Part shown: one piece after another, positions 343 to 41,834 of the stretch
How positions within the stretch are numbered: the stretch's first letter is position 1
Layout: each line of letters starts with the position of its first letter
Origin: Octopus bimaculoides
Lineage: Eukaryota
Reading direction: 5' to 3'
NCBI RefSeq assembly: GCF_001194135.2
Contig: NC_069004.1
Location: 20,980,611-21,044,610 of the forward strand
DNA length: 64,000 nt
The notes under the pieces: model-generated
The model's input: only the letters and a program-made list of their open reading frames with translations
Told to the model about the DNA's origin: nothing
Databases searched by the model: none
Made by a program: the position numbers and the translations under genes

Positions 343-492
343 GGATGAATTTCAGTGTAGTAAATCAAATGATAGAGATGTTATTTAAAATCGTATGATA
401 AAGGTGTTGTTTAAAAAGTTATTGGTATAGATGTGTATTGGTATAAATTTGGTCTAAAATTTGGAAAAAATAATATAAATACACCGATCTTT

Positions 493-3257: not shown

Positions 3258-3391
3258 ACATATACATACACATACATATACACATACATATATATATATA
3301 TACACATACATATATATATATATACACACATACATATATATATACACATACATATATATATATATACACACATACATATATATATATATAT

Positions 3392-3423
<32 letters not shown>

Positions 3424-3618
3424 ACANNNNNNNNNNNNNNNNNNNNNNNNNNNNNNNNNNNNNNNNNNNNNNNNNNNNNNNNNNNNNNNNNNNNNNNNNN
3501 NNNNNNNNNNNNNNNNNNNNNNNNNNNNNNNNNNNNNNNNNNNNNNNNNNNNNNNNNNNNNNNNNNNNNNNNNNATATACACATACATATATATATATAC
3601 ACATACATATATATATAT

Positions 3619-3673
<55 letters not shown>

Positions 3674-3712
3674 CATAAACATACATGCATACATACATAC
3701 ATATGTATTTAG
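3258..3712. repeat. (TA)n/(TACA)n compound microsatellite with N gap
   Basis: Direct reading. It produces the YIYIY pseudo-ORFs. Confidence 0.98.
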
Positions 3713-4262
3713 GGAAAATAGGGATGTTCATCATAAATGTAGTAATACTAATCCATAACAAGGAGACCTAAGAGGTAGTGTTTTTCTATTAATTGTAAGG
3801 ATAGTCTCAATTAATTAATTAATTAATTAAAGTTTTTCATGGAATAATATAACATACTTTGTTGTGTCTGGTGGGGAGTCATTCTGTCTCAATGCCTTAT
3901 TAATTAACAAGCTCACAGGTTCAATTTCCACTCATTTATTATTTATGAAATACAAAAACGAAATATGACATATGCAATTTCAGAATTCAACTTGGAAATT
4001 AGCTGAGCTAAGCACTGTACACCATAGCACTAGGAATATTCTTAAAGCAAAAACCATTTTTTGTCTGTTTTTGAAAAGCTAGTCTATGTCTTCCAGGATG
4101 TAATTGTTTTAGTTTCAACATGCAGATTAAATCATTCGCCTCCCAAGTATATCTCCAAAATATCTAATATTTAAATAAATAAATGAAAAAAAAACATGAA
4201 GTACAAAGTCAAAATAAGGAAAATGAAAGGAATGAAGCGTAGTATTTTGCTTTGAACTTTAC

Positions 4263-4334
4263 CTTATTTGTAACATCGTACACAATAACAATAGCAGAGG
4301 CACCGTGCATTTGGCTGGAATAATTGGTAAGGAG
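4263..4334 (-). CDS. Rab-family small GTPase, switch II/beta4 exon, 72 nt
   Basis: Acceptor TTTCATTCCACCACAG|, LLTNYSSQMHGASAIVIVYDVTNK (GAxAxxxVYDVT), donor AAG|GTAAAG. After splicing, the E-to-GA spacing is 11 aa, as in canonical Rabs. Confidence 0.9.
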
Positions 4335-4527
4335 CTGTGGTGGAATGAAATATACAGAAGAGGTAATAAACAATGAATAATAGGAGAATAAAACATAAAT
4401 GGATATATATCAAAGGAAGAGTGAAAGAGAGAAGAGGAGGAAAGAGAAAGAAAATAAGAGAAAAATAAAGAGAGAAGGAAGAAAGAAAACAAAGAGTAAA
4501 TCAAGGAAATGAAAGGAATAAAAAATG

Positions 4528-4713
4528 CATGACTGTGTAGTAAGAAGCTTGTTTCCCAACCACATGTTTCTGGGTTCAGTCCCACTGTGTAGCACCTTGG
4601 GCAAGTATCTTCCACATAAACCTTGGATTGACCAAAGTCTTGAGTCGATTTGGAAGAGAGAAACTGAAGAAACCTGTATTGTATATACACATATATATAT
4701 ATATATATATATA
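4528..4713 (+). mobile_element. SINE family A 5' half, running into TA repeat and gap
   Basis: GACTGTGTAGTAAGAAGCTTG...GGGTTCAGTCCCACTG...CACCTTGGGCAAG. Confidence 0.85.
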
Positions 4714-5189
4714 TNNNNNNNNNNNNNNNNNNNNNNNNNNNNNNNNNNNNNNNNNNNNNNNNNNNNNNNNNNNNNNNNNNNNNNNNNNNNNNNNNNNNNN
4801 NNNNNNNNNNNNNNNNNNNNNNNNNNNNNNNNNNNNNNNNNNNNNNNNNNNNNNNNNNNNNNNNNNNNNNNNNNNNNNNNNNNNNNNNNNNNNNNCTTCC
4901 ATTTATTTTGAATGTATGATCTGGCGTTGTTTCGAAACTGTTCGGTATGAGCATGTGAGTGTGTGCAAGCTCGTATGTGTGCACGCTCATATGTGTGCTC
5001 GCACTTATGTGTTCGTGCTTATATGTAAGTATGTGCGTCCATATGTGTGTTTGTAACAATTTCATTTATATCCGATCAGATAGAGACTTTTTTTTTTATT
5101 TTTATATATTTTTTTTTTTAAATTTAAATTTATTTATTTACGTTCATATTCCGCATCATATGTGTGAACAACACATGCAACCATGGGCA

Positions 5190-5580
5190 ATTGTAAGGCC
5201 CTCATCTACGTGTATTTGGTGTTCAAAATTGGTTGCGTTTCAGTTATGAGGACCGACTCCTGTATTTGTTGCAACAATGCGTCACCTGGGGGGTCTAGAC
5301 AGGATTTCTATGCTAATTCTGTCCAGTACACCACCATGTTGTTCTTTGGCATGCTGGTAGAGCACCGAGGTTTGTTTTTGATTATTATAGTCCCTCCAAT
5401 GTTCGTTTACACGCTCAGCCAAACTTCTTGCCGTTTCACCTATGTATGTCGTGTTTCTGTTTTTACACTCACCATCCATACAGCTTATTTTGTAGACCAC
5501 ATTTCTGGCTTTGCAGTTGGCACCAGGACTATATTTGCACACAATGCAACTCTCCTCAACACACCTTGTTCTTCTGAAGG
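5190..5580 (-). mobile_element. Penelope-like element GIY-YIG endonuclease fragment
   Basis: CKARNVVYKISC..TYIGETARSLAERVNEH, continuing after a frameshift as DALLQQIQESVLITETQPILN. Same family as the endonuclease at ~33890-34170. Confidence 0.88.
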
Positions 5581-6421
5581 GATATGTTTTACATATTATA
5601 TATTATTTTATGTATATTAATAATAAAACATGTATTAGCAAGACAAAAACGAAATGATGGGGTAACTTACGAGCTGAGATGTTACATGGTCAGTGACTGT
5701 TAGAAGGTTTGTTTACATAGAGTTATGACGGGGTCACCGATATTATTCCATGGGCTGTAGGCATAAGAACGCTAGTTTACATAGAAATATAAAGGGAGGG
5801 TGTTATTGATGTGATGCTAAAGGTTGTGGTCAAGGAGTTATTCGGGTGGGTGAGGGGAGATAATTAAAGTGAATGTTTACATATGTGTCTGCTAGCATGC
5901 AGACACCTATGTACAAACACGTGCGTGTACGCACATACACACATACATATGCGCACCCCCATGTGTACATACCCACACACATACACATACACACCCATAC
6001 AGAAACCTCCACATGCACATATGTACATACACGCTCACCTATACATACGTGCCTGTATCTATACCTACATTCCTGTATATGTACAAACATACAAGTATCC
6101 ACACCCGCACATACCTACATATGCACGCATGCATATACACACATTTGTATATATTTGTACACACTTGTATGTATGCACAAGTATACACCCATAAACATAC
6201 TCACACATACACACACACATGTACCCACTCACACACCCACACACGCCCACCCTCACATGCACTCACAAACATACGTATGCATATATGTACCCCAAAACAC
6301 ACGTGTTTTTTGTTTAAGGCTATAAAAAATAATACTATTAATAACACACTGATTTAAAGCGAAGAGCATAAACATGATAAAGAAATATCATTACCCTGTT
6401 ATATATTAATATCCTTATGTT

Positions 6422-7146
6422 TGCGTTAATCAGTGTAAAACCGAAGTATAGGGTGTTAGCTGAGAAATAATAATAATAATAACAAAACACATGCTCATAA
6501 GGAGAAGGTCAGATCTATGGCTAAGCAGTTGGTGATGCAAGGTAGCCTTAGCTGTAATTACTGGGAAGGAAAAAATTAATCAACTATAGAAGGGGAAAAG
6601 GCAAGTTGTGGTGGAAGAAGAAGTGGAAATTATTCATAGGATATTGGTTAAAAAAAAAAAAATATATAATAACTATAATAAAAATACTGCTTGGAGCCTA
6701 ACCTAGTGGGAATGATGGAGCTAGCTGTAATAAAGGAAGGTATGTTTCTTGAAGTGCTGACAGCGNNNNNNNNNNNNNNNNNNNNNNNNNNNNNNNNNNN
6801 NNTGCGTTAATCAGTGTAAAACCGAAGTATAGGGTGTTAGCTGAGAAATAATAATAATAATAACAAAACACATGCTCATAAGGAGAAGGTCAGATCTATG
6901 GCTAAGCAGTTGGTGATGCAAGGTAGCCTTAGCTGTAATTACTGGGAAGGAAAAAATTAATCAACTATAGAAGGGGAAAAGGCAAGTTGTGGTGGAAGAA
7001 GAAGTGGAAATTATTCATAGGATATTGGTTAAAAAAAAAAAAATATATAATAACTATAATAAAAATACTGCTTGGAGCCTAACCTAGTGGGAATGATGGA
7101 GCTAGCTGTAATAAAGGAAGGTATGTTTCTTGAAGTGCTGACAGCG
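6422..7146. other. 344-bp apparently identical duplication flanking a 37-N gap (probable assembly overlap)
   Basis: 6422-6765 matches 6803-7146 by eye, and both copies abut the gap. Confidence 0.85.
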
Positions 7147-7461
7147 GTACGCTCTCTGAGTGATTTGGTTAACTAGGCGATTCCTGGAGAACAGGATATA
7201 AAAAAGTTCTAAGTTACAAAGAGGGCAGAATTCCCTCCCCTTATCATAGGGCACTGAGGTGGCCAGTATAGACCATTCCAAAGAGAATTGCTTATTGCAA
7301 TCCTTCAGTTCCCAAATAAATTTACTTAGGCCAGTGGTGCTAGCTTTATTTCTATCTCTAAACGACGAATAATGATTCGAGATTCTCTTGGATATCTGTG
7401 TCGATGAGCTACCTACATAATATGTGACATCAGTGTTGGAAGTTACCTTGCATTGATACAC
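7102..7461 (-). mobile_element. GIY-YIG endonuclease ORF (119 aa) of a second Penelope-like family
   Basis: MYQCKV..YYVGSS..KRISNHYSSFR..STTGLSKFIWELK..WSIL..CPLCNLE..CQH; open reading frame ending in a stop. Confidence 0.85.
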
Positions 7462-7574
7462 TACATTTTTGGTCCTTCAATTCTCACCCATCATTTCGTT
7501 TTTGTCTTGCTAATACATGTTTTATTATGATCTCCCTGATGAGAAACAAGTGATGATTCCAGCNNNNNNNNNNA

Positions 7575-8357
7575 GGGTCAGTTGGGCACCATCTGTGAGA
7601 AAAACAGCCCCATGATGCAATTCACTCTGCTAGAAATTTGAAATCAACATGCTGTACTGCTTGGCATTTGCGCCAGAAGCTCCAATATGAACAGATGGTG
7701 AACACACAGAACAGTTGGCTCACTGTTTCCCCAAAACATGTACCAAGAGTGATAAAAATCAAACATCCAGTCAACATCATGATATTTGGAGTGATCACTA
7801 GTGATGTGACATTATGCCTCCATTCATCTTCCTACATGGTCTCAGACTCAACACAGAGGCCTACATCAAGTGCCTGGAGGAGTTAGTGCTGCCCTGGCTC
7901 AAGAGGCTGGCTGGTGGAAGATCCTCTGTCTGGCAACAGGACTCTGTACCATGCCACACAAGCAGGAGAACCCAGTCATGGCTGTCAGACTATTTCTGCG
8001 ATCACATTAGACCTGACATCTGGCCACCTAACTCCCCAGACTGCAACCCCCCTTGATAATTATGTGGGGCGCAGTTGAGCAACAAAACTCCTTGTGACAC
8101 CAAAGACGAATTGAAGGCAAGGATTATGACAGCATTCACCAATTTAAACAAGGAGACCATCCAGAAGAGCTGCAGGAGATTCCAAAGTCATCTGGAGGCT
8201 GTGATTGAAGCCAATGGGGATTTTATTGAATAAATTTACTTGTTAGTATTTCAAGATATTTTTATGTAATTTAGGTAAATATATCTGTTAAAATGAGATG
8301 CCAGCATTATTTTCATTTTTGCGTAATTTAGACAACAATATATTCACTGCACCGTGT
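7575..8357 (+). mobile_element. maT (DD37D) Tc1/mariner-superfamily transposase, 3' part, decayed
   Basis: WQQDSVPCHTS...WPPNSPDCNP(L)D, with 37 residues between the second and third acidic residues. The 5' end is lost in a gap. Confidence 0.85.
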
Positions 8358-8599
8358 GTATGTGTCCCTTCCTCCACTACTTGACAACCGGTGTTGGTGT
8401 GTTTGTATCCCCGTAACTTAGCAGTGCAGTAAAATAAGTCGACAGGATAAGTACCAGGCTTAAAAAAAGGAAAGTATTGGGGCTGATTCATTTGACTAAA
8501 AATTCTTTAAGGCAGTGCCCCAGCATGGTCGCAGTCTAATGACTCAAACAAATAAAAGATAAAAAGAGGAGAAAGAGAGGGTGTATTTATGAACTTCTT

Positions 8600-9430
8600 T
8601 TTACTGTTAACCTAAGAGTCCTAGTAGCTAAAATATTCAGAAAATTACACAGCATTTTGAATGCACGGTATAGGTTTTTAACCTGTCAGTAAATGTGAAA
8701 AAGACTGAAGTGTTGTTCTAACTTAAACTGGGAGTGCAAATCAGTCCCTATAGTGAAAAAGATCATATACTGAGGCAGCACAATTTCTGATGGCAACAGC
8801 CTGGATGTAGATAGAATTGGTTGGTTACAATTACAGTTACTTTTGAGAAGTTCAATAACTGATTGTGGAAATAATATGGCATAAAACTTATCAAGAAAAT
8901 GCACTGAGCAGTAGTACTATCTTGTTTGTTATGTTCTGCTTAAACTTACAAACTGTATTGTCACCATATGAAAAAAGCTGATGAGCTGTCACCTATGCTT
9001 GTTACAATCTATAATGAACATTTCTAATCAAAATGTCCAGTAAAGGGTAAATATGTCTAGTGCAGAGTCTATACTGATGCAATCACAATTATGCTTGGTG
9101 GGGGTACATAATATGTACAGACATTAGGATATGATTCACATGGAAGCTGCAGAAGATGGGCCCAGAAACTTCATTATGATGAAGTCATCAAATGAAGTAG
9201 ATGGCCTGAGTGAAACTGCATGAGAGAAAACAGCAACTGATCACAAACACGAGGAGAGGGCAAGGATGGAAGGAATAAACGTTACAAAGTCTAATAGGGT
9301 GAAACAACAGGAAGAAAGAAAGAGAAACTACAGCAAGGTCAATTATGTTGGGATTACCAACAATATTCTGCAATAATTGTGGTCAAGGTTGTGCTTAACC
9401 TAAAGGGTTACAATCCAACAAAAGAGCAAA
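8600..9430 (+). mobile_element. Old, highly decayed RTE-like LINE 3' fragment (different family)
   Basis: Interrupted frames GSTISDGNSLD, AVVLSCLLCSA*TYKLYCHHMKK, ESILMQSQLCLVG and a terminal FCNNCGQGC resemble the RTE C-terminus. Confidence 0.6.
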
Positions 9431-9479
9431 ACATTGTTGATGAAATTTCTTTGCCATATTCAAAATGGCTTTGCATTCT

Positions 9480-9877
9480 GGATCCAAATTCCACCGAAAT
9501 TGAATTTGCTTTTCATCCTTTTGGGGTTGATAAATTAAGTACCTGTTGAACTCTGGGATTGATGTAATCAGTTATCCTCTCCCACAAAATTTCAGGCTCT
9601 GTGCCAAAAGTTAGAAAGAATAGTTTTTATTATTGTTATTATATGATTGTTGTTGTTGTTATTCTTATTACCATAAAAGCAGCAAGCTGGCAGAATCATT
9701 AGCATGCCAGGCAAAATGCTTAGCGGTCTTTACATTCTGAGTTCAAATTCTGGCATGGTCGACTTTGCCTTTCATCCTTCTGAGGTCAATAAAATAAGTA
9801 CCACTTGAGCAATGGGGCCAATGTATTCAATTTACCTGTTCCCCTGAACTTGCTGGCATTGCACCAAAAGTTGAAAC

Positions 9878-9942
<65 letters not shown>
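9480..9942 (+). mobile_element. Two SINE family B copies (one partial) followed by (ATT)n
   Basis: AGCTGGCAGAATCATTAGCATGCC...GAGTTCAAATTC...GACTTTGCCTTTCATCC, homologous to 49837-50067. Confidence 0.8.
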
Positions 9943-9943
<1 letters not shown>

Positions 9944-11057
9944 GTAGTAGTAGTTCTTGATGCAGAAGCCACATTAGAAATAGTAAATAAGGAGCTGTTT
10001 AATGCCAAACTGCCCACTCTGTCAGTTGAGAGATATTTATAGAGAGGGTGCTGGAGTCTTAAGCACTTTGAAATTTATTATTGTATGTTGATTCATCAAG
10101 AGGGGAGGAGACAGAGGAGATAAGGAAGGAAGAAAACGACTGAAAGAGAGGGAAAAGAAGTAGAAGCTAAAGAAACATAAAAGATAAGTTCTGAATTTAA
10201 GAGTGCCATAAAACTCACACTATTTTACTAACAGATAATCTGAAACACTAAGCATATTTATAGCAATACACAAACGTGTGTGGATGTGTGTTTATGTGTA
10301 TGCTCATCATCATCATAGTAACGTTTACTTTTCCCATGCTTGCATTGATCAGGTAGATGACAACAAGGCAAACTTTTCTATGGCTGGATCCTCTTCCTGA
10401 TCTCAACCCTCACCTGTTATCAAGCGAAGTAATAACCTCCCCCTCCGGAGTATCAAACAATGATCAGCTTCAACATATTTTCATAGAGAACTGGAAACAA
10501 GCAATACCATTTACGTAAATTGTGAAGCTTTTGGTTACAGAGTGTGACATGCGAAGAAATCTCAAGAAGCTTGAAGATTCTTTTGCAGCAGACTGCAAGT
10601 AAACAACAGCAGACTGTAAGTAAACAACAGCAGACATACTGAAAACAAAGACAAATATAAACCCACTCACACACATACATAACAATCCTCTTCGGTTTCC
10701 ATTTACCAATTTTACTCACAAGGTATTGATCAACAGAATTTGAAGAAATGGTTACGGTAGAGAATACCAACCAACTAACCATAGTGGGACTGAACCTCTA
10801 ACCATATAGTTCATAAGTGAACTTTTTAACTACATAGCTGTGCCTGCACATTTATTTATTTATATATGTAGACAGATGCAGCAATCATGAGGTCTTGATT
10901 TTAATTCCACTGCATAACATCTTGATCAAATATCACAATACCTTGTGGGTAGGTGATAATTGTCTGAATGGAAGCACTTCAGATGAATTGTGTCTGTAAC
11001 ATAAAGGTCCACTCTTGTCATAATTTTATACTGATTCTGCCTTAGAATTACATTAAG

Positions 11058-11109
<52 letters not shown>

Positions 11110-11112
<3 letters not shown>

Positions 11113-12445
11113 TATGTGATCAAAAGTATCCAGACACCCACCTGATAATGAAGTACAAATTTGGGCCACTCTCCACTGGGAACAGTGGCAGTCAATATGG
11201 TGTTGGCCCACCCTTAGCCTTGATGATAGCTTCCACACATTGTAGGTCATGTTTAGTGGCAGGGGTCTATTGTGATTTTGTTTTCATGATATGAGAAGTG
11301 CTTGAGATTTTAAAGACGAACAAAATGTTTAAGTTAAAACCTTCCATGTGGTTGAAACAATTAGGTGGCAGGTCTCCTGGGAAATGGCAGCCCATTCTTT
11401 GCAGAGCATCGAAATGAGCAAGGGTATTGATGTGGGTCAATGTGGTCTAGCATGAAGTTGGCATTCCAAAACATCCCAGAGATATTCGATGGAATTTAAA
11501 TCAGGATTCTGCATAGACCAGTCTATTAGTGGGATGTTGTTGTCATCAAACCAACCCCTACAACCCCTGCAGTATGGACAGGTGCTCGGTCATGTTGAAA
11601 GACACAACGGTCATCCTCTAACTGGCTTTCAACGGGAAGTAATATGAAAGTGGTTAAAATGTCAGTGTAAGCTTGTGCTGTGATAGTGCCACATAAGGCA
11701 ACAAGGGGGCCTAGCCCCCTCCAGGAGAAATATGACTACACATGACTCCATCACCGCTGAATTTCACAGTCAGCACTATCCAGACTGGTGCATATCATTC
11801 ACTAGGTATTCGTCACACCCACGCACTACCATCAGATCACAACATTGTGTACTGTGATTCATCACTCCACACAATTGTTTTCCACTATTCTATAGTCCAG
11901 TTTTGACACTCTTCACACCATGCAAGCAGGCATTGGGCAGCTGTTCTTCTAGGGAAACCAAGCTTCCACACCTTGTGCCAAACAGCTATTATAGTCGTTG
12001 GAGTAGATCCTGTCGCAGTTTGGAATTTGTGTGATGGTAGTGAGGGGTGAGAGAAAATTATGCTATATGACCCTCTCCAACTCTTGACAGTCTGTAAGGG
12101 TTAACAAGGGAGGTTGGCCCAAGGGAGGTTATACACATCCTCTCATGTTTCCACATCACAATTACTTTAGAATCAGTGGACCTAGGGACGTTCAGGAGGG
12201 TGGAAATGTTGCATACAGGCTTAGTAGACAAGTGGCACCCAACCACCTGACTATGTTGAAAGTCCATTAGTTCCACAGAGCATCCCGCTCTGCTGCTTAG
12301 CACTGTCTGCTAGCTACTGAGATTGCTGACCATGTGTTGCACATGGAAAATGGTAGTGCTGTGGTGCCCTCTGTGATCTACTGTGTTGCCCTTTATGATA
12401 AACACACATTTCACAGGGCATCCAGACACTTTTGATCACATAATG
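11110..12445 (-). mobile_element. Tc1-like DNA transposon, both TIRs, decayed transposase, with a 103-bp foreign insert
   Basis: ~30-bp TIRs CACTATGTGATCAAAAGTATCCAGACACCC and GGGCATCCAGACACTTTTGATCACATAATG, TA at the right end. HTH fragment DFQHSQVVGCHL..ISTLLNVPRST. Confidence 0.88.
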
Positions 12446-12684
12446 TATATATATGGAATACACAGCCACTTTCACACGAATTCGATGAGCCAGGTTTAGT
12501 TGATCAATCAACACTCAGGGTCAGAAATCCTGAGATACTATGGTGTGTAGTATCTCCTGATGACCCCCATACACTTGCTGGCTTCCAGTATGTGGAGCTT
12601 TCGACTGGTAGCACTTACATGTGCAAGTTGTTTGCAAAACGTGTGTGTTTGTGTTTGTGCGTGTGTGTGTGTGTGTGTATCTTA

Positions 12685-12884
12685 TCTTTTATCTTTTACT
12701 TGTTTCAGTCATTAGACTGCAGCCATGCTGGGGCACTGCCTTGAAGAATTTATAGTCAAATATTTCGACCCCAGTACTTTTTGTTTTAAGCCTGGTACTT
12801 ATTCTGAATTGCTAAGTTATAGGGATATAAACACACCAACACTGGTTGTTGAGTAGTGGAGATGGGGGGAGGGGACAAACACAG

Positions 12885-12942
<58 letters not shown>

Positions 12943-13095
12943 GACAGGCTTCTTTCAGTTTCTGTCTACCAAATCCACTCACAAGGCTTTGGTCAGCCTA
13001 AGGTTATAGTAGAAGACACTTACCCAAGGTGCCACACAGTGGGGCTGAACCCGGAACCATATGGTTGGGAAGCAAGCTTCTTACCACACAGCCAC
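12685..13095 (-). mobile_element. Full-length SINE family A
   Basis: Collinear homology to 2378-2772. Confidence 0.88.
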
Positions 13096-13779
13096 ACCTG
13101 AATCTGTACACACACACATACACACACCTATATACCCAGGTTCTCATCATCCACTGCAATCCCCACTCCTTACTTGTACCTTCTAGGCAATACCTGGCCA
13201 TATATTTTATGACCTCCATACCTTGAGGGCATGTCCTAGCAATTGCCACCATCTATCTCTCTCTTCCTAACTTTACCATCATATCTATGCTCTGATCCTT
13301 ATCACTTGTGAGTATACCCTGGCACTTCACCACCATCTCTCTCCTGCTCTGTCTTGCACTTTTGCTGTCTCTCTCACTCCCTCTCTCTCTTTCCCTTGCT
13401 CTTTCCTCTGGATGGGTAGCCATGTTTTTCCTCTACAGCAGCACACCTGTTTCTTCCTTCATTCTTGATAACACTCTCTTCTCTTGCTCTTCACTGTGGC
13501 TAGATAACCAAGTAACTCCTTTACATCAGCACATCTGTTTTTGTCCTCTTTTCTCTTCTTTCTCTCTCTCTCTCTCTGGTCAGTTAACCATGTATCTCCT
13601 CTATAGCAGACACCTGTTTCTGACTTTCTGTTTCTCTGTCATACTCTAACCTTTCATTGTCTGACACAAGATCACCTTCTCCAATGCCCCTCCCCACCGC
13701 CATGCAAGATACCTGTTTCTACCTCTGTCTCACTTTTACACTCCTCCAATGTCCCCTCCCCTCTCAAAATTTCTTGTCT

Positions 13780-14110
13780 TGCTAGTTACTTGGTGATCCT
13801 GCCAGTGCTGGTGCCACATAAAAAAACATCCAGCCCACACTGAACTAGTTGGCATTTGGAAGTGGATCCACCTGTAAAAACCATGCTAAAACTGACCTCA
13901 TCTGTGCTTGGTGCCACATAAAAAGCACTCAGTCCATTCTGCAGGGTGGCTAGTGTTAGGAAGGGCATCCAGCCATAAAACTCATGCCAAAACAGACACA
14001 GTAACCTAGGATAGTCTTCTACCTGGCTGGCTCCTGTCAAAGTGTCCAACTATGCCAGTATGGAAGGCAGATGTTAAACAATGATGATGATGATGATGAT
14101 GTTGATCATC
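13780..14110 (+). mobile_element. RTE 3'-UTR/tail-derived repeat ending in (GAT)n
   Basis: TTAGGAAGGGCATCCAGCC...CCATGCCAGTATGGAAGGCAGATGTTAAACAATGATGATGAT. The same tail ends the RTE copies at 45445 and 61254. Confidence 0.8.
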
Positions 14111-14412
14111 GTCATCATCATGGGCAACAACTCCTACTTGTTATCTCTCTTTCATTAGACATGGCCATGTCCAAATTTTAAAATATACATATAAATACAT
14201 ACATATATGCACATCCATACAGAATATGTGCACACACACACACACACACACCTGCATTACCCATTTTGTTGTGTTTGAGTATGAGCATATGACTGAGGAG
14301 TTCCACATACTTTCACATATTTTGGGGCCAAACTTAGTCCATGGGATTGTGTATTCATAAGTTTGTGTATATATTTTTCTGTGAATCATGCAATATCATA
14401 CACACATGCAGT

Positions 14413-14451
<39 letters not shown>

Positions 14452-14454
14452 ATA

Positions 14455-14830
14455 GCACCAGCACCATCCCAGATATAGGAGTAGTACTTGTAGAGTGTCT
14501 GTAAGTGTTGGCTGTTAAAATATTTTCTGACCCAGAAGAGAAAGGCCAATCTCTGAGATGCAGTCCTAGCTATATTAAATATATGCTTTCACCAGGAAAG
14601 GTCTTCTAGGATAGTGAGGCCCAGTATTTGGAGTGACTGAGAGAGCTAGCTGTGTATTGGTCATGTTTAGTGGCAGGGGTCTGTTGTGATTTTGTTTTCA
14701 TGATATGAGAAGTGCTTGAGATTTTAAAGGCTATCAAAATGTTTAAGTTAAAACCTTCCATCATAATTTTATTTAAGAAGCTTTTGTTTTCAATCAGAAA
14801 TAGCTGAATCACTGTCAGAACTAGAGAAGT
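14455..14830 (-). mobile_element. CR1/L2-like LINE RT C-terminal fragment, decayed
   Basis: LQILGLTILEDLSW ... FLFWVRKYFNSQHLQTLYK..YSYIWDG resembles the RT thumb region of CR1-group elements. Confidence 0.6.
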
Positions 14831-16019
14831 TTCAGTTATGGAAGCAAGGTCTAGAATCAAAGGGCCTTAGAGTTAACCAAACAAAAACCAAGGTCTTAGT
14901 AAGTAGGAAGACAGACAAATCACAAATCCCCTCAGGTAGATGGCCCTGCTTGATATATTGAAAAGGTGTAGGTAGAAACTCCATAAGATGCACCTAGTGC
15001 AAGCTATGGACACGTAAGAGGTGCAGCAGTATCAGAGGAAGGTTAAGAAGGAAACTAGCTTTTGTGTGTGGAAGATGCACAGGTACAATAAACACTGAAA
15101 AAATACAGAAAATAGACTCCCTCAACTGCCATGGAGGTAAGCTAAGGGTAGTAGATAGCTTCTGTTATCTAGGTGACCAAGTTAGTAGCAGAGGTGGATG
15201 CTCTAAGAGCATAGCTGTGAGAATAAGAATAGGCTGGACAAAGTCCAGAGTGAAAGGTAGATTGTATGATGCCTGTGTGCAAACAGCTAAGCTACACAGC
15301 AGTGAAACATGAGCTGTGACTGCTGAGGCCATGCATAGACTTGAAAGGAATGAAGCCAATATGCTTCACTGAATGTGCAATGTCAGTGTGCATGTATAAC
15401 AGAGTGTAAGCATCTTGTGGGAAAAGTTGGGCATAAGAGGCATCAGATGTGGTATGCAAGAGATACAACTGCACTGATATGGTCATGTGGTGCACATGGA
15501 CAAAGACAGCTGTGTAAAGAAGTGCTGATCTCTACCTGTGTAGGAAACCTATGGTAGAGGTAGACCCAGAAAGACATGGGGTGAGGTGTTGAAACATGAT
15601 ATTTGAACTTTGGGCCTCACACAGGCAATGACTAGTGTCCTAGACCTTTGGCAATATTCTGTGCTTGAGTAGACCTGTCAAGCAAAGCAGCCAATACTGG
15701 TGACATGAGGAACGCTCCTTTCAAGGGTTGGGCCTCACGGAGGCAATGACGAATGATCAAGACCTTGGCATTATGTCATGCTTGACCCATCAAACCAAGT
15801 AAAATCACAGTCATAGCAGATACTGGTGTCATATAAATGGCACCTGTGCCAGTGCCATGTAAAGCCATCCATTACATTCTCAGAGTGGTTGGCATTAGGA
15901 AAGTCATCTGGCCATAGAAAACCAAGCCAAATCAGACTGGAGTCTGGTGTAGCCTTTCAGCTTGCCAGCCCTGGTCAAACTGTCCAACCCATGCCAGCAT
16001 GAACAACAGACGTTAAATC

Positions 16020-16063
<44 letters not shown>
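14831..16063 (+). mobile_element. 5'-truncated RTE LINE 3' end with 3' UTR and (GAT)n tail
   Basis: WKQGLESKGLRVN..TKV, CGRC, VVDSFCYLGD, KGRLYDACV..HSSET, GRGRPRKTW; tail at ~16018-16063. Confidence 0.9.
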
Positions 16064-16519
16064 AGCATAATGATGAAAAATAAAGCTATTTTTCAAAACT
16101 CTGCAAAGTTCTCAAATATTTATGATATTAATAGAATGATATAAACAGTGTATATAATTGGAATTATGGTCATGAAAGAGTAGAAAGAAAAAACGAAACA
16201 AAACAAAACAAAACAAAAGTAAAATAAGGCAAAACAATCTGTGGTAGTTATTGGTGGTCATACAGTGAAGTTTGTGAGGTTGGCTATGCTTATGAGCTAA
16301 AGAAACTGCTTTCCCTAAAAGCCTTCTGTCTCTATAAGACACTAACACATTCCAACTCAGAAACATTTCTTTAAAATATTCAGCTTCATAAGATGCTAAA
16401 CATAAATGATTTTAAAACAGTTATACATGAAATTGTTAACAAATGCTGAATCATATAACAAAGTATTTGCAAAATAAAATAGAAGAATCAAAATAGAAAA
16501 AATAATAAAAAAAACTAAC

Positions 16520-16601
16520 TCCTTCTTGTCCTGGAGTGTCCCATATCTGGAACTTGTATGTAGTACCATCTAACTGGATTGATTTTGATAAGAAACTAGA
16601 A
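16520..16601 (-). CDS. Rab-family small GTPase, G3 exon, 82 nt
   Basis: Acceptor TTTTTTATTATTTCAG|. The first nt completes the Gly codon, then SSFLSKSIQLDGTTYKFQIWDTPGQEG (WDxxGQ G3 box). Donor GGA|GTTAGT (phase 0). Confidence 0.93.
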
Positions 16602-17299
16602 CTGAAATAATAAAAAAGAGAAAACACAATATAAATTAAGCATTTTAATTTTTTTTTTTAACTAGATATAAAAAGGAAAAAACTTAATTTCAAAATCATT
16701 ATTTTTGAGAAGGGAAAGTATTACACTTTCAATTATTTTACCTTATAAAATCATACAGTTGTTGGTTTGAAGGCAATGGCTACGTGAAACAAATTGATCA
16801 TAAAAAGTTTCTACCATATGACTTTCATATCTCCAGCCATAAAGATGTAAAGGACAAAAAGTGTGTCAGAAGTGAACTGGCTGGAGATAACCCTTAATGG
16901 TGAACATTAATGGGGTTCAATAAAGTACTAGTCAAGTAGAAGAGTATCAACATAATCAACAGTTCCACCACCACCACCACCACTACTTGTCCCCATTTAT
17001 CAAACTATATCAGTAGCACTAGCCATGCATTGATTGAGACTTTGGTTCCTTGATAGGTCAAACAATTAACTATTTATGCATACTAGTGCTGAGTAAGGAA
17101 GCTTTTGCATTGGAACCTAGAGAAGAAAAATAACTGAAGGAACCAGGGCATGACATAGAATCAAGTGAAAAAACGCATTGTACATAATGCTTTGGAAGAT
17201 TCTGTGGAGAATTTATATTCCACCAGGAATCCAAAGATTCCAAACACATCTTCATTGTGATGATGATGAAGGCTTCAATAACTGTTATTTAATGTCTAG

Positions 17300-17855
17300 C
17301 TTTTATCTTTTACTTGCTTAAGTCACTGGACAGAACTATGCTGGGACAATGCCTTGAAGGATTTTAGTCAAACAAATAGTCCCTAGAACTTTTTTTTAAA
17401 GTCTGGTACTTATTCTATCGGTCTATTTTGCCAAACTACTAAGTTACAGGGACATAAACCAACACCAATTCCAAGCAGTGGGGGAGGGGATGACAAACAC
17501 AAAAGCACACACACGAGAAGCTTCCACACAGTTTCCATCTACCAAATCTACTCTCAAGGCATTGGTTGGCCTGGGGCTACAGAAGAAGATGCTTGCCCAA
17601 GGTGACGCATAGTGGGGCTGAAACCAAAACCAAACATTCCAACTTTCTTTTTTTACTATATGATCTTGCATATTCTTATTGTTATTTCTGAAATCATCCA
17701 GCCAACATGGGCCTAAACATTGGTTGTGTGGTTAAGAAGTTTGCTTCATATATATCTTGTTCTGGGTTCAGTTCCACTAAGCAGCACTTCAAGCAAGTAT
17801 CCTCTACCAAAGCCTTGGTTCAGCAATATTTTGTAAGTGAAATATAACACAGAAA

Positions 17856-17905
<50 letters not shown>

Positions 17906-19155
17906 GCGTGCGTGCATTCACATGTGTGTGCAAATATATATTTCACCAATGTTAATCAGTAAAGGTTGTAAAGATTGGCAAGAAAACTGAAAAGTTGGTG
18001 TTTTGGGACAGCGTCCTCATTGATATTTGTTCTGCATGGGGTTACAAACACTCTCTATCACTTTCAGCACTATAAATGCAATAAATCATTGATTGGTCCA
18101 TTAGAAATGTGAAACCAATGACACTATATCCAGAAGGAGGATTCAATAACACCCAACCAAGCATGGCTATTCATTTGGACCACTCCATATTCCCAGAAAG
18201 TAGATTCCACATAATGTCACAATCCACTTGGTCTCTCTCATTAGGCTACATCCAAATTTATTCAAGCAGTCACATGGAGTGAATGCTTAGAGAAATAAAT
18301 CAAGACTAGTAAACAAAATAGACACAGATGTGGCTGTGTGGTAAGAAGTTTGCTTCCCAACCACATGGTTCAAGGTTCAGTGTGGCACTTTGGGCAAGTG
18401 CCTTCTACTATAGTCTCAGGCTGACCAAAGCCTTGTGAGTAGATTAGGTAGACAGAAACTGAAAGAAACTCGTCATATATATATGTGTATGTGTGTCTTT
18501 ATGTCTGTCCCCCACTACTGCTTGGTGTTGATATGTTTATGATCTTTCTAACTTAGCAGTTCAGCACAAGAGAACAATAGACTAAATACCAGTTTAACAA
18601 AATGTAAGTACTGGAGTTGATTCATTCAACTGAAAATTCTTCAAGGCAGTGCCCTAGCATGGCAGCAGTTTAATGACTGAGACAAGTAAAAAAAAAAAAA
18701 GAAAAGAAAAATCAACTCCACCACTTGCTGGATATACAGCATATAATGTGGTAACTCAGAGTTTCTGATCCAGTTTCAATCCTCGGCTAAAACAAATTTG
18801 TTTGTCTCATCGTTTATCTTTCATCTGTTTCAGTCATTCAACTATGGTCTTGAAGGGTTTTCATTGAACAAATCAATCCCAATACTTAATTTTATTAATA
18901 ATATTTACCAAACTGCTAAGTTACGAGGATGTAAAAAAACCAAGACCAGTTATTAAGTGGTGGAATGAATAATTACAAATCCAAAGATACACACACACAC
19001 ATGATGGGCTTCTCTCAGTTTCCATCTACCAAATTCACTCACAAGGCATTGGTTAACCCAGAGCTATAGTAGAAGGCACTTTCCCAAGGTGCCATGCAAT
19101 GAGACTGATCTCAAAACCACGTGGGTGCAAAGAAAGCTTCTTAACCACACAGCCA
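17300..19155. mobile_element. Cluster of SINE family A copies in alternating orientation (~17300-17620 -, ~17720-17860 +, ~18328-18690 +, ~18810-19155 -)
   Basis: Homology to 2378-2772; boundaries approximate. Confidence 0.82.
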
Positions 19156-19923
19156 TGTCTATAATGGACCTTAAGTAAAGAAAACATTTCACTATAACCA
19201 ACAGTCTTGGGTCTTGTGTCAATATACAGTCTACTAGAAATAACAGTCAAACTCCTTTAAATTACACTCTCATGAAAAATTTTTTAAAAAGGGGAAAAGA
19301 AGGATGTGCAGAATAATGTAGTCCTACTAAAAGATTGGATGCGAGTGGAATTTTTTTGAGCATATATCTGTTTGATCATAAACAACCTGCAGCTAAACAA
19401 CAACTACAAGATTGGTTTTTGAAAATAAATATGTATTTGAAATGTATTAAAAAAGGCAACAATCAAAATTACAACCTAAATTTTAAAAAAATAAATATAT
19501 ACAAAATATAGAATGTATAGAATAAAATAAAAACATAGTTTTAGCACCAATTTTGACAGAGAAAAGAGCAACAAGTACTACCAACATCAAAGAGCTTGTT
19601 GCTTGACTGTGTCTCAAGTTGGTGCTTATAATGGACTGTATTTCATGGCATAAAAGATGCATGGCCAAATTAGAAAAACTTCAATTTCATCAGCTCATAT
19701 TCAGGAAAACAGTTTTTAGTGCATTAAAGCTTATTGCATGCCCAACTTCACATAGGGGTGGTTCTTTTAAGATTTTTTTGGGACACACGCACACACACAC
19801 ACACACACACATGCAAAAGAGTATGTCTTATATGCCATCAAATATAGTATGTTTTCCATTAAAACCACAGCAAATAATTCATGAAGTGAAAGATGTTTTA
19901 AAATGGTTAAAATATTTATTTAC

Positions 19924-20003
19924 CCTAAATTTGTGTCTATGGAACCAGTAAAATGTTCAAGTGTCATACGGAAGAGCATGCTACTTTTGCCAACTCCTCT
20001 ATC
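19924..20003 (-). CDS. Rab-family small GTPase (Rab22/Rab31-like), P-loop/switch I exon, 80 nt
   Basis: Minus strand: acceptor TTTTTTGTTCTTTTGAAG|, exon translating to DRGVGKSSMLFRMTLEHFTGSIDTNLG (G1 GxGKS), donor GG|GTAAAT (phase 2). Joins in frame to the 16520-16601 exon. Confidence 0.92.
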
Positions 20004-20081
20004 CTTCAAAAGAACAAAAAAAAACAAACAAACATATATTCTTAAGAATTATTGTCTGCAATAATTAACATCATCTTTACA

Positions 20082-20122
<41 letters not shown>

Positions 20123-20364
20123 CATGCAAACATGCATGCACACATACACACACACACATATGCATGCACACATACATAGACACATTATTTCAAACAGCTG
20201 AATAAAACATAGCAGTTAATTGCAACTCATTTTCTTGTATTTCTTTCCAGTGTTTATACACAACTCATTGAAACCAAGAACTTGTAATTATATCAGAATC
20301 TGAGACACACCAATCAACCAACTAAAAGTTCATAATACATTAATGTTTATATTTATCATGTTTT

Positions 20365-20752
20365 TTCTTTTACTTGTTTCAGTCATTAGACTGCGGCCAT
20401 GCGGGAGCACCACCTTCAAAAAGTTTTAGTCAAATGAATTAACTCCAGAACTTGCATTTTTTAAAACCTGGTACTTATTCTATCAGTCTCTTTTGCCAAA
20501 CCACTAACTTATGGGAATGTAAACACACCAACACCAGTTGTCAAGCAATGATAGAGGATAAACACAGACACATACACACAAACACACACATATATACAAT
20601 GAGCTTCTTTCAAATTCCATCTACCAAATCTACTCACAAAGCTTTGCTTGACCTAAGACTATGGTAAAAGACACTTTCCCAAGGTGTCATGCAGTGTAAC
20701 TAAACCTGGACCCGTGTGGTTGGTAAGTGAGCTTCTTACCACACAGCCATGC
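20365..20752 (-). mobile_element. Full-length SINE family A
   Basis: Collinear with 2378-2772. Confidence 0.86.
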
Positions 20753-21816
20753 CTGTGTTATTAATACAAAAAAAAAAAAAAAATCAAGCAAACATATAAG
20801 TTATTGTGGCACAATGACAGTGAAATCAAAGTGTTGGATTACTAATGATTAGGCTAGAAGCTCAAATCATATTACTATCATAGTGGTTTTACTTCTGAAA
20901 AAGGTAATTAACTGACTGCATCTTTATACATGAGTTGTTAGTGGTAGAAATAAGCGATTGTACATAAATTGTGCAAATTGCTCTAATGACCCAATAAGTG
21001 TGTCTCTCATATGCTATTTGCTCTGCAAGAAATGGCAACTAAATCTCCCTCAAAAATTGCATTCTATCACAGGAGAGGCCATATTGGATATAGTTATGAA
21101 AAGTTCAAGTCAAAATAGATACTAGTGGAATGTCTTTCAACATAGGTCTGCTGGATTAGAGTTAACATGGGATTAAACAACAATAACTACTCCAACAGAT
21201 AAGCCATTCCATTCATGTACAAAGAAAACAGGCGATAAATCTTCATCTTTGCAGTTTAGTCAATTAGCACATCTGTTTGTTAACTAAGACTGGTAGTTCA
21301 AGCCCATCCAGAAATGATAGCTTTAAACTTCTAGGCACAGACATAGCTGTGTGTTTAAGAAGATCACTTTGCAACCACATGGTTTTGGAGTTCAATCTAA
21401 ACTTGCTCTTGGGCAAATCATCATTATTATCATTTAGCATCTGTTTTCCATGCTGGTATGGGTAAGATGGTGTGACTGGAACTGATAAGCCAGAGAGCTG
21501 CGCTAGACTTCAGCCTGTTTTGGCTTGATTTCTACAACTGGATGGCCTTCCTGATGCCAATCACTCAAAAGAGTGTACTGGGTAGATTTAACATGTCACC
21601 AGCATGGATGCTTTTACATGTCACTGGCATGGGTGTCTTTTACATATCACCAATATGGATGCTTTTAGATGTCATCGGCACAGGTGTCATTTGCATGTCA
21701 CTGGCACAGGTGCCTTTTATGTGTCACTGGCATGTACTTTACATGTCTTCTACTATAGCCCCAGAGCAACCTATGCTTTGTAACTAAATTTGAGACAGAA
21801 ACTGAGTGGAAGCCTG

Positions 21817-21865
<49 letters not shown>

Positions 21866-41830: not shown

Positions 41831-41834
41831 AATA

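What the first reader, a model, noticed from the sequence alone, without database searches (positions are those of the whole stretch)
4263..20003. Hidden, divergent Rab22/Rab31-like GTPase with rewritten switch I and switch II
Seen: three GT-AG exons splice in frame (234 nt, 78 aa) to DRGVGKSSMLFRMTLEHFTGSIDTNLG-SSFLSKSIQLDGTTYKFQIWDTPGQEG-LLTNYSSQMHGASAIVIVYDVTNK. None appears in the ORF track in the right frame. Established: Rab22/Rab5-type proteins read P-T-I-G in switch I (the Thr binds Mg2+/gamma-phosphate), DTAGQE in G3, and R-F/Y-x-x-L-A-P-M-Y-Y-R-G in switch II. Here the peptide aligns without gaps, but PTIG becomes TNLG (Thr position = Asn), DTAG becomes DTPG, and switch II becomes GLLTNYSSQMHG. 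The P-loop, WD/GQ and VYDVT are retained. Inference: intact frame and splice sites with changes concentrated in the effector/GEF/GAP surface suggest a lineage-specific atypical Rab paralog with altered nucleotide cycling or partners. A young pseudogene is the alternative.
Basis: partly seen in the sequence, partly recalled or inferred. Interest (0 to 1): 0.75.

Follow-up and report, generated by a model that had tools for sequence, protein, structure and literature searches.

The report
Atypical Rab22-derived GTPase gene of octopuses
The three exons are real: they are coding exons 2-4 of an already annotated, conserved octopus gene for a Rab22-derived small GTPase that has lost its switch-I threonine, its Rab-type switch II and its usual lipid-anchor motif, while the normal-looking Rab22A of octopuses is an intron-less copy.

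Summary
Three minus-strand exons (20003-19924, 16601-16520, 4334-4263) have AG/GT sites and splice in frame to the 78-aa peptide. The N gaps lie inside the 12-kb intron and touch no coding sequence.

The gene is not hidden. The peptide is 100% identical to residues 13-90 of Octopus bimaculoides XP_052832223.1 ("Rab-5A-like isoform X1", 202 aa), whose gene spans about 129 kb, so the other four coding exons lie outside the window. Orthologs exist in O. vulgaris/sinensis, in Argonauta hians, and in RNA-type contigs of an unidentified species.

It is not a pseudogene: Octopus versus Argonauta gives pN 0.066 against pS 0.70.

All six intron positions and phases equal those of Lottia and Pecten Rab22 and differ from a bivalve Rab1. 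The canonical Rab22A of Octopus and Argonauta has none of these introns, so it looks like a retrocopy.

Asn at the G2 threonine and Pro in DTAG occur in 0 of 283 other Rabs sampled. A new switch-II motif (NYS..HGAS) is conserved, and the C-terminus is a CaaX box (CNLS) instead of CC.

An altered nucleotide cycle, REP/GDI independence and farnesylation are inferences. This is a new variant of a known kind, of moderate interest.

The parts
19924..20003 (-). Coding exon 2 (80 nt, residues 13-39: DRGVGKSSMLFRMTLEHFTGSIDTNLG). It carries most of the P-loop and switch I, with Asn37 in place of the G2 threonine. It starts in phase 0 and ends in phase 2.
   Evidence: identical to P0151 residues 13-39; same length and phases as exon 2 of Lottia and Pecten Rab22 and of the Argonauta ortholog.
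16602..19923 (-). Intron 2 (3322 nt), GT...AG.
16520..16601 (-). Coding exon 3 (82 nt, completes Gly39 and encodes residues 40-66: SSFLSKSIQLDGTTYKFQIWDTPGQEG). It holds the interswitch strands and the G3 motif DTPGQE.
   Evidence: 82 nt, as in Lottia and Pecten Rab22 and Argonauta.
4335..16519 (-). Intron 3 (about 12.2 kb). It contains the three N gaps named in the finding (4715-4895, 6766-6802, 7564-7573) and a LINE-like fragment at 14799-15687.
   Evidence: no exon lies between exons 3 and 4 in the gap-free Argonauta locus.
4263..4334 (-). Coding exon 4 (72 nt, residues 67-90: LLTNYSSQMHGASAIVIVYDVTNK). It holds the rewritten switch II (RabF3/RabF4 lost, NYS..HGAS conserved) and beta-4 (RabF5 kept).
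   Evidence: 72 nt as in Lottia and Pecten Rab22, 75 nt in Argonauta.
20004..64000 (-). Part of intron 1. Coding exon 1 (MLVRNVKLVFLG, 36 nt) is not in the window. This stretch contains LINE-like reverse-transcriptase fragments and several N gaps.
   Evidence: no match to exon 1; the gene spans about 129 kb in GCA_001194135.2.
1..4262 (-). Part of intron 4. Coding exons 5-7 (NKCD, ETSAL, CaaX tail) are not in the window. It contains an N gap at 3427-3574 flanked by microsatellite, and a LINE-like fragment at 483-1776.
   Evidence: no match to residues 91-202.

Best explanation
The three exons are coding exons 2-4 of 7 of a functional octopus gene. The gene is about 129 kb long and encodes a 202-aa small GTPase, annotated as XP_052832223.1 'Rab-5A-like'. 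It descends from the intron-bearing molluscan Rab22 gene and has so far been seen only in cephalopods.

Shown here: the gene is intact, conserved and under purifying selection. It keeps the Rab22 exon-intron structure. It keeps the nucleotide-binding elements: P-loop GDRGVGKS, NKCD, ETSAL and the catalytic-position Gln64. It has lost the G2 threonine (Asn37 in all lineages). Its G3 motif is changed (DTPG in octopods, DTAR in the third lineage). The Rab-specific switch II motifs RabF3 and RabF4 are replaced by a new conserved motif (N70-Y71-S72...H76-G77-A78-S79). The C-terminal CC is replaced by a CaaX box, C-[N/H]-[L/I]-S, preceded by lysines.

Inferred: the protein still binds guanine nucleotide. 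It no longer runs the standard Rab cycle of gamma-phosphate sensing by Thr and Gly, Vps9-type GEF and TBC GAP action, and REP/GDI recognition through switch II. It is probably anchored to membranes by CaaX farnesylation rather than REP/RabGGTase-dependent double geranylgeranylation, and it presents a new effector surface.

The canonical Rab22A of Octopus and Argonauta lacks all six coding introns, which suggests a retrocopy. The atypical gene is therefore probably the diverged parental copy, or a DNA-level duplicate of it.
For: Identity and intactness: the peptide is 100% identical to P0151 residues 13-90. Full-length orthologs are P0386, P0152 and P0003.

Transcription: P0003 is encoded as an uninterrupted 597-nt ORF on 19 Logan contigs of 2.3-2.7 kb from several runs.

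Selection: Octopus versus Argonauta gives pN 0.066 and pS 0.695. Octopus versus P0003 gives pN 0.148 and pS 0.713. The canonical copy has dN 0.005 in the same codons.

Origin: exon lengths 36/80/82/72(75)/124(127)/93 and all six intron phases equal those of Lottia and Pecten Rab22. A bivalve Rab1 has 14/73/48/48/96/132. The best non-cephalopod hits are bivalve Rab22A-like proteins and the best PDB hit of the full protein is Rab31. Profile scores are Rab22 190-193, Rab5 172-194 and Rab1 139-159 bits. Three near-exclusive residue states are shared with cephalopod canonical Rab22A, against 0-1 with other groups.

Canonical copy: it co-exists and is intron-less over residues 1-199/206.

Rarity of the changes: at the G2 position the other Rabs have T in 281 and S in 2 of 283, with no N. 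They have A in 283 of 283 where octopods have P, and G in 283 of 283 where P0003 has R.

Fold: AlphaFold2 gives pLDDT 83.7 with low confidence only in switch I, switch II and the tail. TM-score is 0.93 to Rab5, Rab22 and Rab31.
Against: No biochemical or localisation data exist, so altered cycling, farnesylation and REP/GDI independence are inferences from motifs.

Pro in the G3 motif (DxPG) is normal in translation-factor GTPases (my own knowledge). An Asn side chain could conceivably still contact Mg2+. Gln64 is kept. A working, if unusual, switch therefore cannot be excluded for the octopod protein.

Sequence alone does not separate Rab22 from Rab5 ancestry, and a neighbour-joining tree groups the clade with Rab1 at 90% bootstrap. 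I attribute that to long-branch attraction because gene structure and profile scores contradict it. A Rab5 gene structure was not available for comparison.

No Octopus transcript contig encoding exactly P0151 is on record. Synteny could not be tested, so 'parental copy' is not proven.
Confidence: 0.8

Rival explanations
1. Young or unprocessed pseudogene: the exons are relics of a Rab gene drifting without function.
For: The divergence is concentrated in normally invariant motifs. No exact Octopus transcript contig is on record.
Against: Full-length intact ORFs with conserved splice sites exist in at least four species. pN/pS is about 0.1 with synonymous sites near saturation. The changed positions are themselves conserved: N37, N70, Y71, S72, H76 and the CaaX box. 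The ortholog is present in many RNA-type contigs.
Confidence: 0.02
2. It is a conventional GTPase switch. The substitutions are tolerated variants, and the protein cycles and is regulated broadly like other Rabs, only with different partners.
For: The P-loop, NKCD, ETSAL and Gln64 are intact. DxPG is a normal G3 motif in translation-factor GTPases (my own knowledge). The predicted fold is a standard Rab fold.
Against: The G2 threonine is T or S in 283 of 283 other Rabs sampled and is Asn here. The sister lineage has Arg in place of the DxxG glycine. RabF3 and RabF4, the switch II surface used by GDI/REP and many regulators (my own knowledge, after Pereira-Leal and Seabra 2000), are replaced. 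CC is replaced by CaaX. Octopods carry Arg at the Ras-G12-equivalent P-loop position, where none of the other sampled Rabs has Arg.
Confidence: 0.25
3. It derives from Rab5 or Rab1 rather than Rab22. RefSeq names it 'Rab-5A-like', and a neighbour-joining tree groups it with Rab1.
For: The neighbour-joining tree gives 90% bootstrap with Rab1. The 78-aa fragment scores best against Rab1A. The Rab5 profile scores as high as the Rab22 profile for P0003. Identity to all three families is 40-45%.
Against: Six of six intron positions and phases equal molluscan Rab22, and only one of six coincides with a bivalve Rab1 intron. The Rab1 profile scores 35-50 bits lower. The 12-residue N-terminus M-x-V-R-x-V-K-L-x-x-L-G has the Rab22 length and pattern. 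The top database hits are Rab22A-like. A Rab5 gene structure was not tested. From memory, vertebrate Rab5 genes lack the P-loop and GQE introns.
Confidence: 0.1
4. The atypical gene is a DNA-level duplicate at a new locus, and the canonical Rab22A lost its introns in place (cDNA-mediated conversion), so the atypical gene is not the 'parental' copy.
For: Nothing distinguishes the two scenarios here. The canonical copy has an acceptor site directly before its ATG and a conserved far-downstream 3' exon, which fits either a retrocopy that recruited exons or in-place intron loss.
Against: Simultaneous loss of all six coding introns is the usual signature of retroposition (my own knowledge). No positive evidence for in-place loss was found.
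Confidence: 0.3

Closest known systems
Rab22A/Rab31 (Rab22 subfamily, endosomal Rabs of the Rab5 supergroup)
   Same: All six coding introns are at identical positions and phases to Lottia and Pecten Rab22. The 12-residue N-terminus has the same pattern. GNKCD and ETSAL are as in protostome Rab22. The best PDB sequence hit is Rab31 and the best database hits are bivalve Rab22A-like proteins. The fold is a Rab fold.
   Different: Identity is only 40-45%. The G2 Thr is Asn, DTAG is DTPG or DTAR, and RabF3/RabF4 are replaced. The C-terminal CC is replaced by CaaX. Nonsynonymous change is about 14 times faster than in the co-existing canonical Rab22A.
Rab28 (atypical, farnesylated Rab with divergent switch I)
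   Same: It is a Rab-fold protein with a divergent switch I and a CaaX-type farnesylation signal instead of CC. PMC5902210 describes Rab28 as peripheral and atypical with divergent switch 1, and cites RAB28 as a farnesylated small GTPase.
   Different: There is no orthology. Rab28 is ancient and widespread, whereas this clade has been seen only in cephalopods and derives from Rab22. Farnesylation here is only predicted from the CNLS/CHLS/CHIS motifs.
PseudoRab / pseudoGTPases (for example Entamoeba EhRabX10 and EhRabX3)
   Same: The G1 P-loop is conserved but the G2 threonine is absent and G3 is non-canonical. PMC8514894 reports this for EhRabX10.
   Different: EhRabX10 also has non-conserved G4 and G5 motifs, whereas here NKCD, ETSA and the Gln are intact.
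Retrogene replacement (for example amphioxus SYCP1, PMC5803294)
   Same: An intron-less copy carries the canonical sequence, while the multi-exon gene is the odd one out.
   Different: In classical retrogene replacement the parental gene is lost. Here the multi-exon copy survives under purifying selection with a rebuilt switch surface. Retroposition and parental status are inferred, not proven.

Membership tests
Ras-superfamily small GTPase (Pfam PF00071) | Profile match above the curated threshold, and the GTPase fold | tested here: met
   The 78-aa peptide scores 64.8 bits (cut-off 21.6), E = 8.8e-18. The AlphaFold2 model has pLDDT 83.7 and a TM-score of 0.93 to Rab5, Rab22 and Rab31.
Ras-superfamily small GTPase | G1 P-loop GxxxxGK[ST] | tested here: met
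   The motif is G12-D-R-G-V-G-K-S19. D13-S19 are in the window exon 20003-19924, and G12 is in exon 1 outside the window. Arg14 at the Ras-G12-equivalent position is unusual: the other sampled Rabs have S, T or A there and none has R.
Ras-superfamily small GTPase | G2 switch-I threonine (Mg2+ and gamma-phosphate contact) | tested here: not met
   Asn37 occurs in Octopus, Argonauta and P0003. The position is T in 281 and S in 2 of 283 other Rab sequences.
Ras-superfamily small GTPase | G3 DxxG(Q) | tested here: inconclusive
   Octopods have D-T-P-G-Q-E: DxxG and Gln are kept, with Pro where 283 of 283 others have Ala. The P0003 lineage has D-T-A-R-Q-E, so the glycine is lost.
Ras-superfamily small GTPase | G4 NKxD and G5 (E)TSA(K/L) | tested here: met
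   N119-K-C-D122 and E147-T-S-A-L151 are present in the full-length protein P0151. These exons lie outside the window.
Rab family (RabF motifs of Pereira-Leal and Seabra 2000, recalled from memory) | RabF1 (IGxxF), RabF2 (KLQIWDTAGQE), RabF5 (LVYDIT) | tested here: met
   The sequences are LGSSF, KFQIWDTPGQE and IVYDVT. These are conservative variants.
Rab family | RabF3 (RFrsit) and RabF4 (YYRGA) in switch II | tested here: not met
   The sequence is GLLTNY and QMHGA. Y74 and Y75 are Y in 281 and 271 of 283 others, and R76 is R or K in 278.
Rab family | C-terminal double-cysteine prenylation motif (CC, CXC and similar) | tested here: not met
   There is a single Cys in a CaaX box: CNLS, CHLS or CHIS. 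A minority of accepted Rabs also end in CaaX (my own knowledge; Rab28).
Rab22 subfamily | Shared exon-intron structure with Rab22 genes | tested here: met
   Six of six intron positions and phases equal Lottia and Pecten Rab22, and a bivalve Rab1 differs. No Rab5 gene was available.
Rab22 subfamily | Phylogenetic or profile placement within Rab22 | tested here: inconclusive
   The top database hits are Rab22A-like and the top PDB hit is Rab31. Profile scores are similar for Rab22 and Rab5 and much lower for Rab1. The neighbour-joining tree places the clade with Rab1, probably through long-branch attraction.
Pseudogene | Disabling mutations or neutral evolution (dN/dS near 1) | tested here: not met
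   There are no stops or frameshifts, and splice sites are intact. pN/pS is about 0.1.

The most novel reading that the evidence does not exclude
In the cephalopod lineage an intron-less retrocopy took over canonical Rab22 function. The ancestral multi-exon Rab22 locus, the gene in this window, was released from constraint. It was then rebuilt under selection into a farnesylated, Rab-cycle-independent, pseudoGTPase-like membrane protein with a new conserved switch-II surface (NYS..HGAS). This would be retrogene replacement with neofunctionalisation, rather than loss, of the parental gene.
Probability: 0.35. Interest if true: 0.65.

Novelty: new variant of a known kind. Interest (0 to 1): 0.45.

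Why it matters
The switch-I threonine and the DTAGQE / YYRG switch II are among the most invariant features of Rab GTPases. A clade that has replaced them, stays under purifying selection, and has exchanged its CC prenylation signal for a Ras-like CaaX box is a natural experiment. It shows how a Rab can leave the GEF/GAP/GDI/REP cycle and acquire a new role.

The gene-structure contrast matters too. The divergent copy keeps all six ancestral Rab22 introns, while the canonical copy has none. This suggests a rare outcome of retroduplication in which the retrocopy keeps the old job and the parental gene innovates.

There is also a practical point. The inconsistent automatic names for this gene ('Rab-5A-like', 'Rab-22A isoform X1', 'Rab-5A') would mislead ortholog-based inference in cephalopod genomics.

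The interest is moderate. Lineage-specific divergent Rabs are common, the gene model is already public, and function is untested.

Tried and rejected
- **Word-indexed homolog search.** The search with the 78-aa peptide returned nothing, a sensitivity limit of the index. The exhaustive HMMER search found P0003, which led to the annotated orthologs.
- **Missing exons in the window.** I looked for them by tblastn with human Rabs and with P0151, P0152 and P0003, by 5-mer search and by a pattern search for exon 1. None was found, which is explained by the 129-kb gene span. The in-frame 'VLLK' just upstream of exon 2 is the polypyrimidine tract, not coding.
- **Neighbour-joining phylogeny.** It grouped the clade with Rab1. 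I rejected this as long-branch attraction because gene structure and profile scores contradict it. A first attempt with Biopython bootstrapping timed out.
- **Region-wise identity.** It did not discriminate Rab22, Rab5 and Rab1.
- **Synteny.** Lottia and Pecten share a downstream PH/IRS-domain neighbour. The 10-kb flanks of the Argonauta locus hold no called gene. tblastx of the Lottia and Pecten flanks against the window and the cephalopod loci gave no meaningful match (one weak 46-aa hit, E = 1.7e-5, to the 3' intron of the canonical Octopus locus L009).
- **Species of the Logan runs encoding P0003.** It could not be identified from the literature library.
- **Literature.** Searches found no paper on a cephalopod atypical Rab22 or Rab22 retrogene.
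- **RNA genes.** Rfam and tRNA scans of the window were empty.
- **Pseudogene hypothesis.** Rejected.

Full report
**1. Observation**

Reading the minus strand confirms the three exons at 20003-19924 (80 nt), 16601-16520 (82 nt) and 4334-4263 (72 nt). Each follows a polypyrimidine tract plus AG and is followed by GT.

Joined, they give 234 nt without a stop. The translation is DRGVGKSSMLFRMTLEHFTGSIDTNLGSSFLSKSIQLDGTTYKFQIWDTPGQEGLLTNYSSQMHGASAIVIVYDVTNK. The peptide matches Pfam Ras at E = 8.8e-18.

The N runs flagged by the scan program (4715-4895, 6766-6802, 7564-7573) all lie within the 12.2-kb intron between the second and third exon. The nearest is 381 nt from an exon edge. In the gap-free Argonauta ortholog the same three exons are consecutive. 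The gaps therefore hide no coding sequence and do not affect the frame.

**2. What it is**

A word-indexed search with the peptide found nothing. An exhaustive HMMER search of 1.84 billion representatives found one close relative, P0003 (198 aa, 76% identity), among thousands of ordinary Rabs.

Searching with P0003 and aligning the hits gave the following.

- The window peptide is 100% identical to residues 13-90 of P0151. This is XP_052832223.1, 'ras-related protein Rab-5A-like isoform X1' of Octopus bimaculoides, 202 aa.
- It is 90% identical to the corresponding region of P0152 (Argonauta hians, GAB1609136.1).

The same 90% cluster holds the O. vulgaris/O. sinensis protein, named 'Rab-22A isoform X1' in one species and 'Rab-5A' in the other. 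It also holds a shorter predicted isoform that lacks the P-loop.

The O. bimaculoides gene spans about 129 kb. This explains why exon 1 (MLVRNVKLVFLG) and exons 5-7 are not in the 64-kb window. The gene is thus not hidden. It is annotated, but under inconsistent automatic names.

**3. Not a pseudogene**

Full-length ORFs with intact G1, G4 and G5 motifs exist in all lineages. I reconstructed the Argonauta gene exactly: seven coding exons, all GT-AG.

| Comparison | pN | pS |
|---|---|---|
| Octopus vs Argonauta, the 78 codons in the window | 0.066 | 0.695 |
| Octopus vs P0003, same codons | 0.148 | 0.713 |

Synonymous sites are near saturation while amino-acid change is held down.

P0003 is encoded as an uninterrupted ORF on 19 Logan contigs of 2.3-2.7 kb from several sequencing runs. 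This is what spliced mRNA would look like. I could not verify the run type or the species.

**4. Origin**

Sequence similarity alone is ambiguous.

- The clade is 40-45% identical to Rab22, Rab5 and Rab1 alike.
- The 78-aa fragment scores best against Rab1A in the PDB.
- The full protein scores best against Rab31, then Rab5A and Rab22A.
- Profiles of equal depth give Rab22 190-193, Rab5 172-194 and Rab1 139-159 bits.
- A neighbour-joining tree attaches the long atypical branch to Rab1 at 90% bootstrap.

Gene structure resolves this.

| Gene | Coding exon lengths (nt) |
|---|---|
| Argonauta atypical gene | 36/80/82/75/127/93/119 |
| Octopus window exons (2-4) | 80/82/72 |
| Lottia Rab22 | 36/80/82/72/124/93/116 |
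| Pecten Rab22 | 36/80/82/72/124/93/143 |
| Potamilus (bivalve) Rab1 | 14/73/48/48/96/132/201 |

All six introns of the atypical gene are at the same positions and phases as in Lottia and Pecten Rab22. They fall after LLG (phase 0), within the switch-I Gly codon (phase 2), after GQE+1 (phase 0), after TxK/E (phase 0), and two in phase 1. The Rab1 gene shares only one of these positions.

The 12-residue N-terminus also fits Rab22: M-x-V-R-x-V-K-L-x-x-L-G. The best non-cephalopod hits are bivalve Rab22A-like proteins. I therefore treat the Rab1 grouping as long-branch attraction and the gene as Rab22-derived. A Rab5 gene structure could not be obtained, so Rab5 ancestry keeps a small probability.

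**5. A canonical Rab22A co-exists and is intron-less**

Searching with a bivalve Rab22 found 'Rab-22A' of O. bimaculoides (P0340, XP_014778318.1) and of Argonauta (P0350). These are about 58-66% identical to the bivalve query, with canonical STIG, DTAGQE and YFRGA motifs.

In both genomes residues 1-199/206 are encoded in one uninterrupted exon. Only a short, conserved 12-aa tail is spliced from far downstream, and an acceptor site lies directly before the ATG. The canonical copy thus lacks all six ancestral coding introns, which is the usual signature of a retrocopy. The divergent copy retains them.

The atypical clade shares three near-exclusive residue states (A96, L116, Q165) with the cephalopod canonical copy, against 0-1 with other groups. 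This is weakly consistent with a duplication inside the cephalopod lineage.

Between Octopus and Argonauta, over the same codons, the atypical copy has dN 0.069 and the canonical copy 0.005. Which copy sits at the ancestral locus could not be tested. Lottia and Pecten share a PH/IRS-domain neighbour, but the available cephalopod flanks are too short.

**6. What changed in the protein**

I compared each position against 283 other Rab1/5/22-type sequences.

| Position | Other Rabs (of 283) | Atypical clade |
|---|---|---|
| G2 threonine | T 281, S 2 | Asn in all three lineages |
| Ala of DTAG | A 283 | Pro in octopods |
| Gly of DTAG | G 283 | Arg in P0003 |
| P-loop, Ras-G12-equivalent | S, T or A; none with R | Arg in octopods |
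| Switch II Y-Y-R | Y 281, Y 271, R/K 278 | Q-M-H, Q-L-H or F-I-H |

Within the rewritten switch II, N70, Y71, S72, H76, G77, A78 and S79 are conserved across the three lineages. This is a new constrained surface, not decay.

The following are retained: GxxxxGKS, the Gln of DTxGQ, NKCD, ETSAL, and the RabF1, RabF2 and RabF5-like segments.

The C-terminus is KKSG-CNLS, KKSG-CHLS or KKSN-CHIS. This is a single-cysteine CaaX box with X = Ser after a short basic stretch, where Rab22 has ...CC.

An AlphaFold2 model has pLDDT 83.7. It is confident everywhere except switch I (block mean 56), switch II (60) and the tail. It superposes on Rab5, Rab22 and Rab31 at TM-score 0.93.

**7. Mechanism**

Shown: the protein is a conserved Rab-fold protein with intact base- and phosphate-binding motifs, but without the gamma-phosphate-sensing threonine. 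In one lineage it also lacks the sensing glycine. It lacks Rab-type switch II and the CC motif.

Inferred from general GTPase knowledge:

- It probably still binds guanine nucleotide.
- It probably does not perform the canonical loaded-spring switch.
- A CaaX box ending in Ser predicts farnesylation, which would give REP-independent membrane anchoring.

I put about 0.5 on this non-canonical-cycle model. I put 0.25 on a still conventional switch, because DxPG is normal in translation-factor GTPases and Gln64 is kept.

**8. Comparison with known systems**

It works like atypical or pseudo-Rabs. Rab28 is farnesylated with a divergent switch I (PMC5902210). Entamoeba 'pseudoRab' EhRabX10 has G1 conserved, the G2 Thr absent and G3 non-canonical (PMC8514894).

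By descent it belongs to the Rab22 subfamily on the gene-structure test. It fails the Rab-family tests for RabF3, RabF4 and the CC motif, and the superfamily G2 test.

The evolutionary pattern resembles retrogene replacement (PMC5803294), except that the multi-exon copy survived and innovated. Literature searches found nothing on this gene or on Rab22 retrogenes in cephalopods.

**9. Verdict**

The gene model is already public, so the exons themselves are not a discovery.

The atypical G2, G3, switch II and CaaX combination, its conservation, and the contrast between an intron-bearing divergent copy and an intron-less canonical copy appear undescribed. They make this a new variant of a known kind, of moderate interest (0.45).

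Noticed in passing
L009:501-1118 (Octopus bimaculoides) and L008:501-1097 (Argonauta hians): The canonical Rab22A of octopods is encoded without any of the six coding introns found in Lottia and Pecten Rab22. Its CC motif is not C-terminal: it is followed by FSSSGSSTAKN plus a conserved spliced tail KST(I/V)EAILKDVY, or by VGTNQ* if unspliced. A Logan variant, P0390, ends VGTNNQ. This is unusual for a prenylated Rab.
   Followed up: partly
window 483-1776, 14799-15687, 45985-47203, 61500-64000: There are four fragments, 73-84% identical to one another, of one LINE-like retrotransposon family within the introns of the gene. There is a weak RVT_1 hit at 46890-47114. The last copy runs off the window end.
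   Followed up: partly
window 3427-3574, 4715-4895, 28226-28500, 35419-35599 and other N runs: The N gaps I looked at, such as 3427-3574 and 35419-35599, are flanked by TA/CA-type microsatellite, read as YIYIYI or HTHTHT in ORF translations. This suggests assembly breaks at simple repeats rather than missing unique sequence.
   Followed up: no
P0387 (XP_052832224.1) relative to window exon 20003-19924: Predicted isoform X2 (182 aa) starts at Met21 (MLFRM...) inside coding exon 2 and so would lack the P-loop. An older model (P0388, 154 aa) has the same start and a different C-terminus. Whether such transcripts exist was not checked.
   Followed up: no
L007:26801-26875 versus window 4334-4263: Argonauta exon 4 is 3 nt longer than the Octopus exon, giving GQERLSTTNYSS against GQEGLLTNYSS. 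The start of switch II is therefore still changing by indel between octopod genera.
   Followed up: yes
Database names of P0151, P0386 and P0374: Automatic names are inconsistent. The same ortholog is called 'Rab-5A-like' (O. bimaculoides), 'Rab-22A isoform X1' (O. vulgaris) and 'Rab-5A' (O. sinensis). A Mya arenaria 'RAB5A-like protein' (P0374) is nearly identical to that species' Rab22A-like protein.
   Followed up: partly
L013 (Potamilus streckersoni, P0227): The bivalve Rab1-type protein used as the gene-structure control is itself slightly odd. It has IMDTAGQE instead of IWDTAGQE and ends in ...GMCFI rather than CC.
   Followed up: no
L010:22198-26412 and L012:23844-27045: Lottia and Pecten share a tail-to-tail downstream neighbour of Rab22: a PH/IRS-domain gene, with tblastx E = 1e-31 between the two flanks. 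It is a usable synteny marker for deciding which octopus copy is ancestral.
   Followed up: partly
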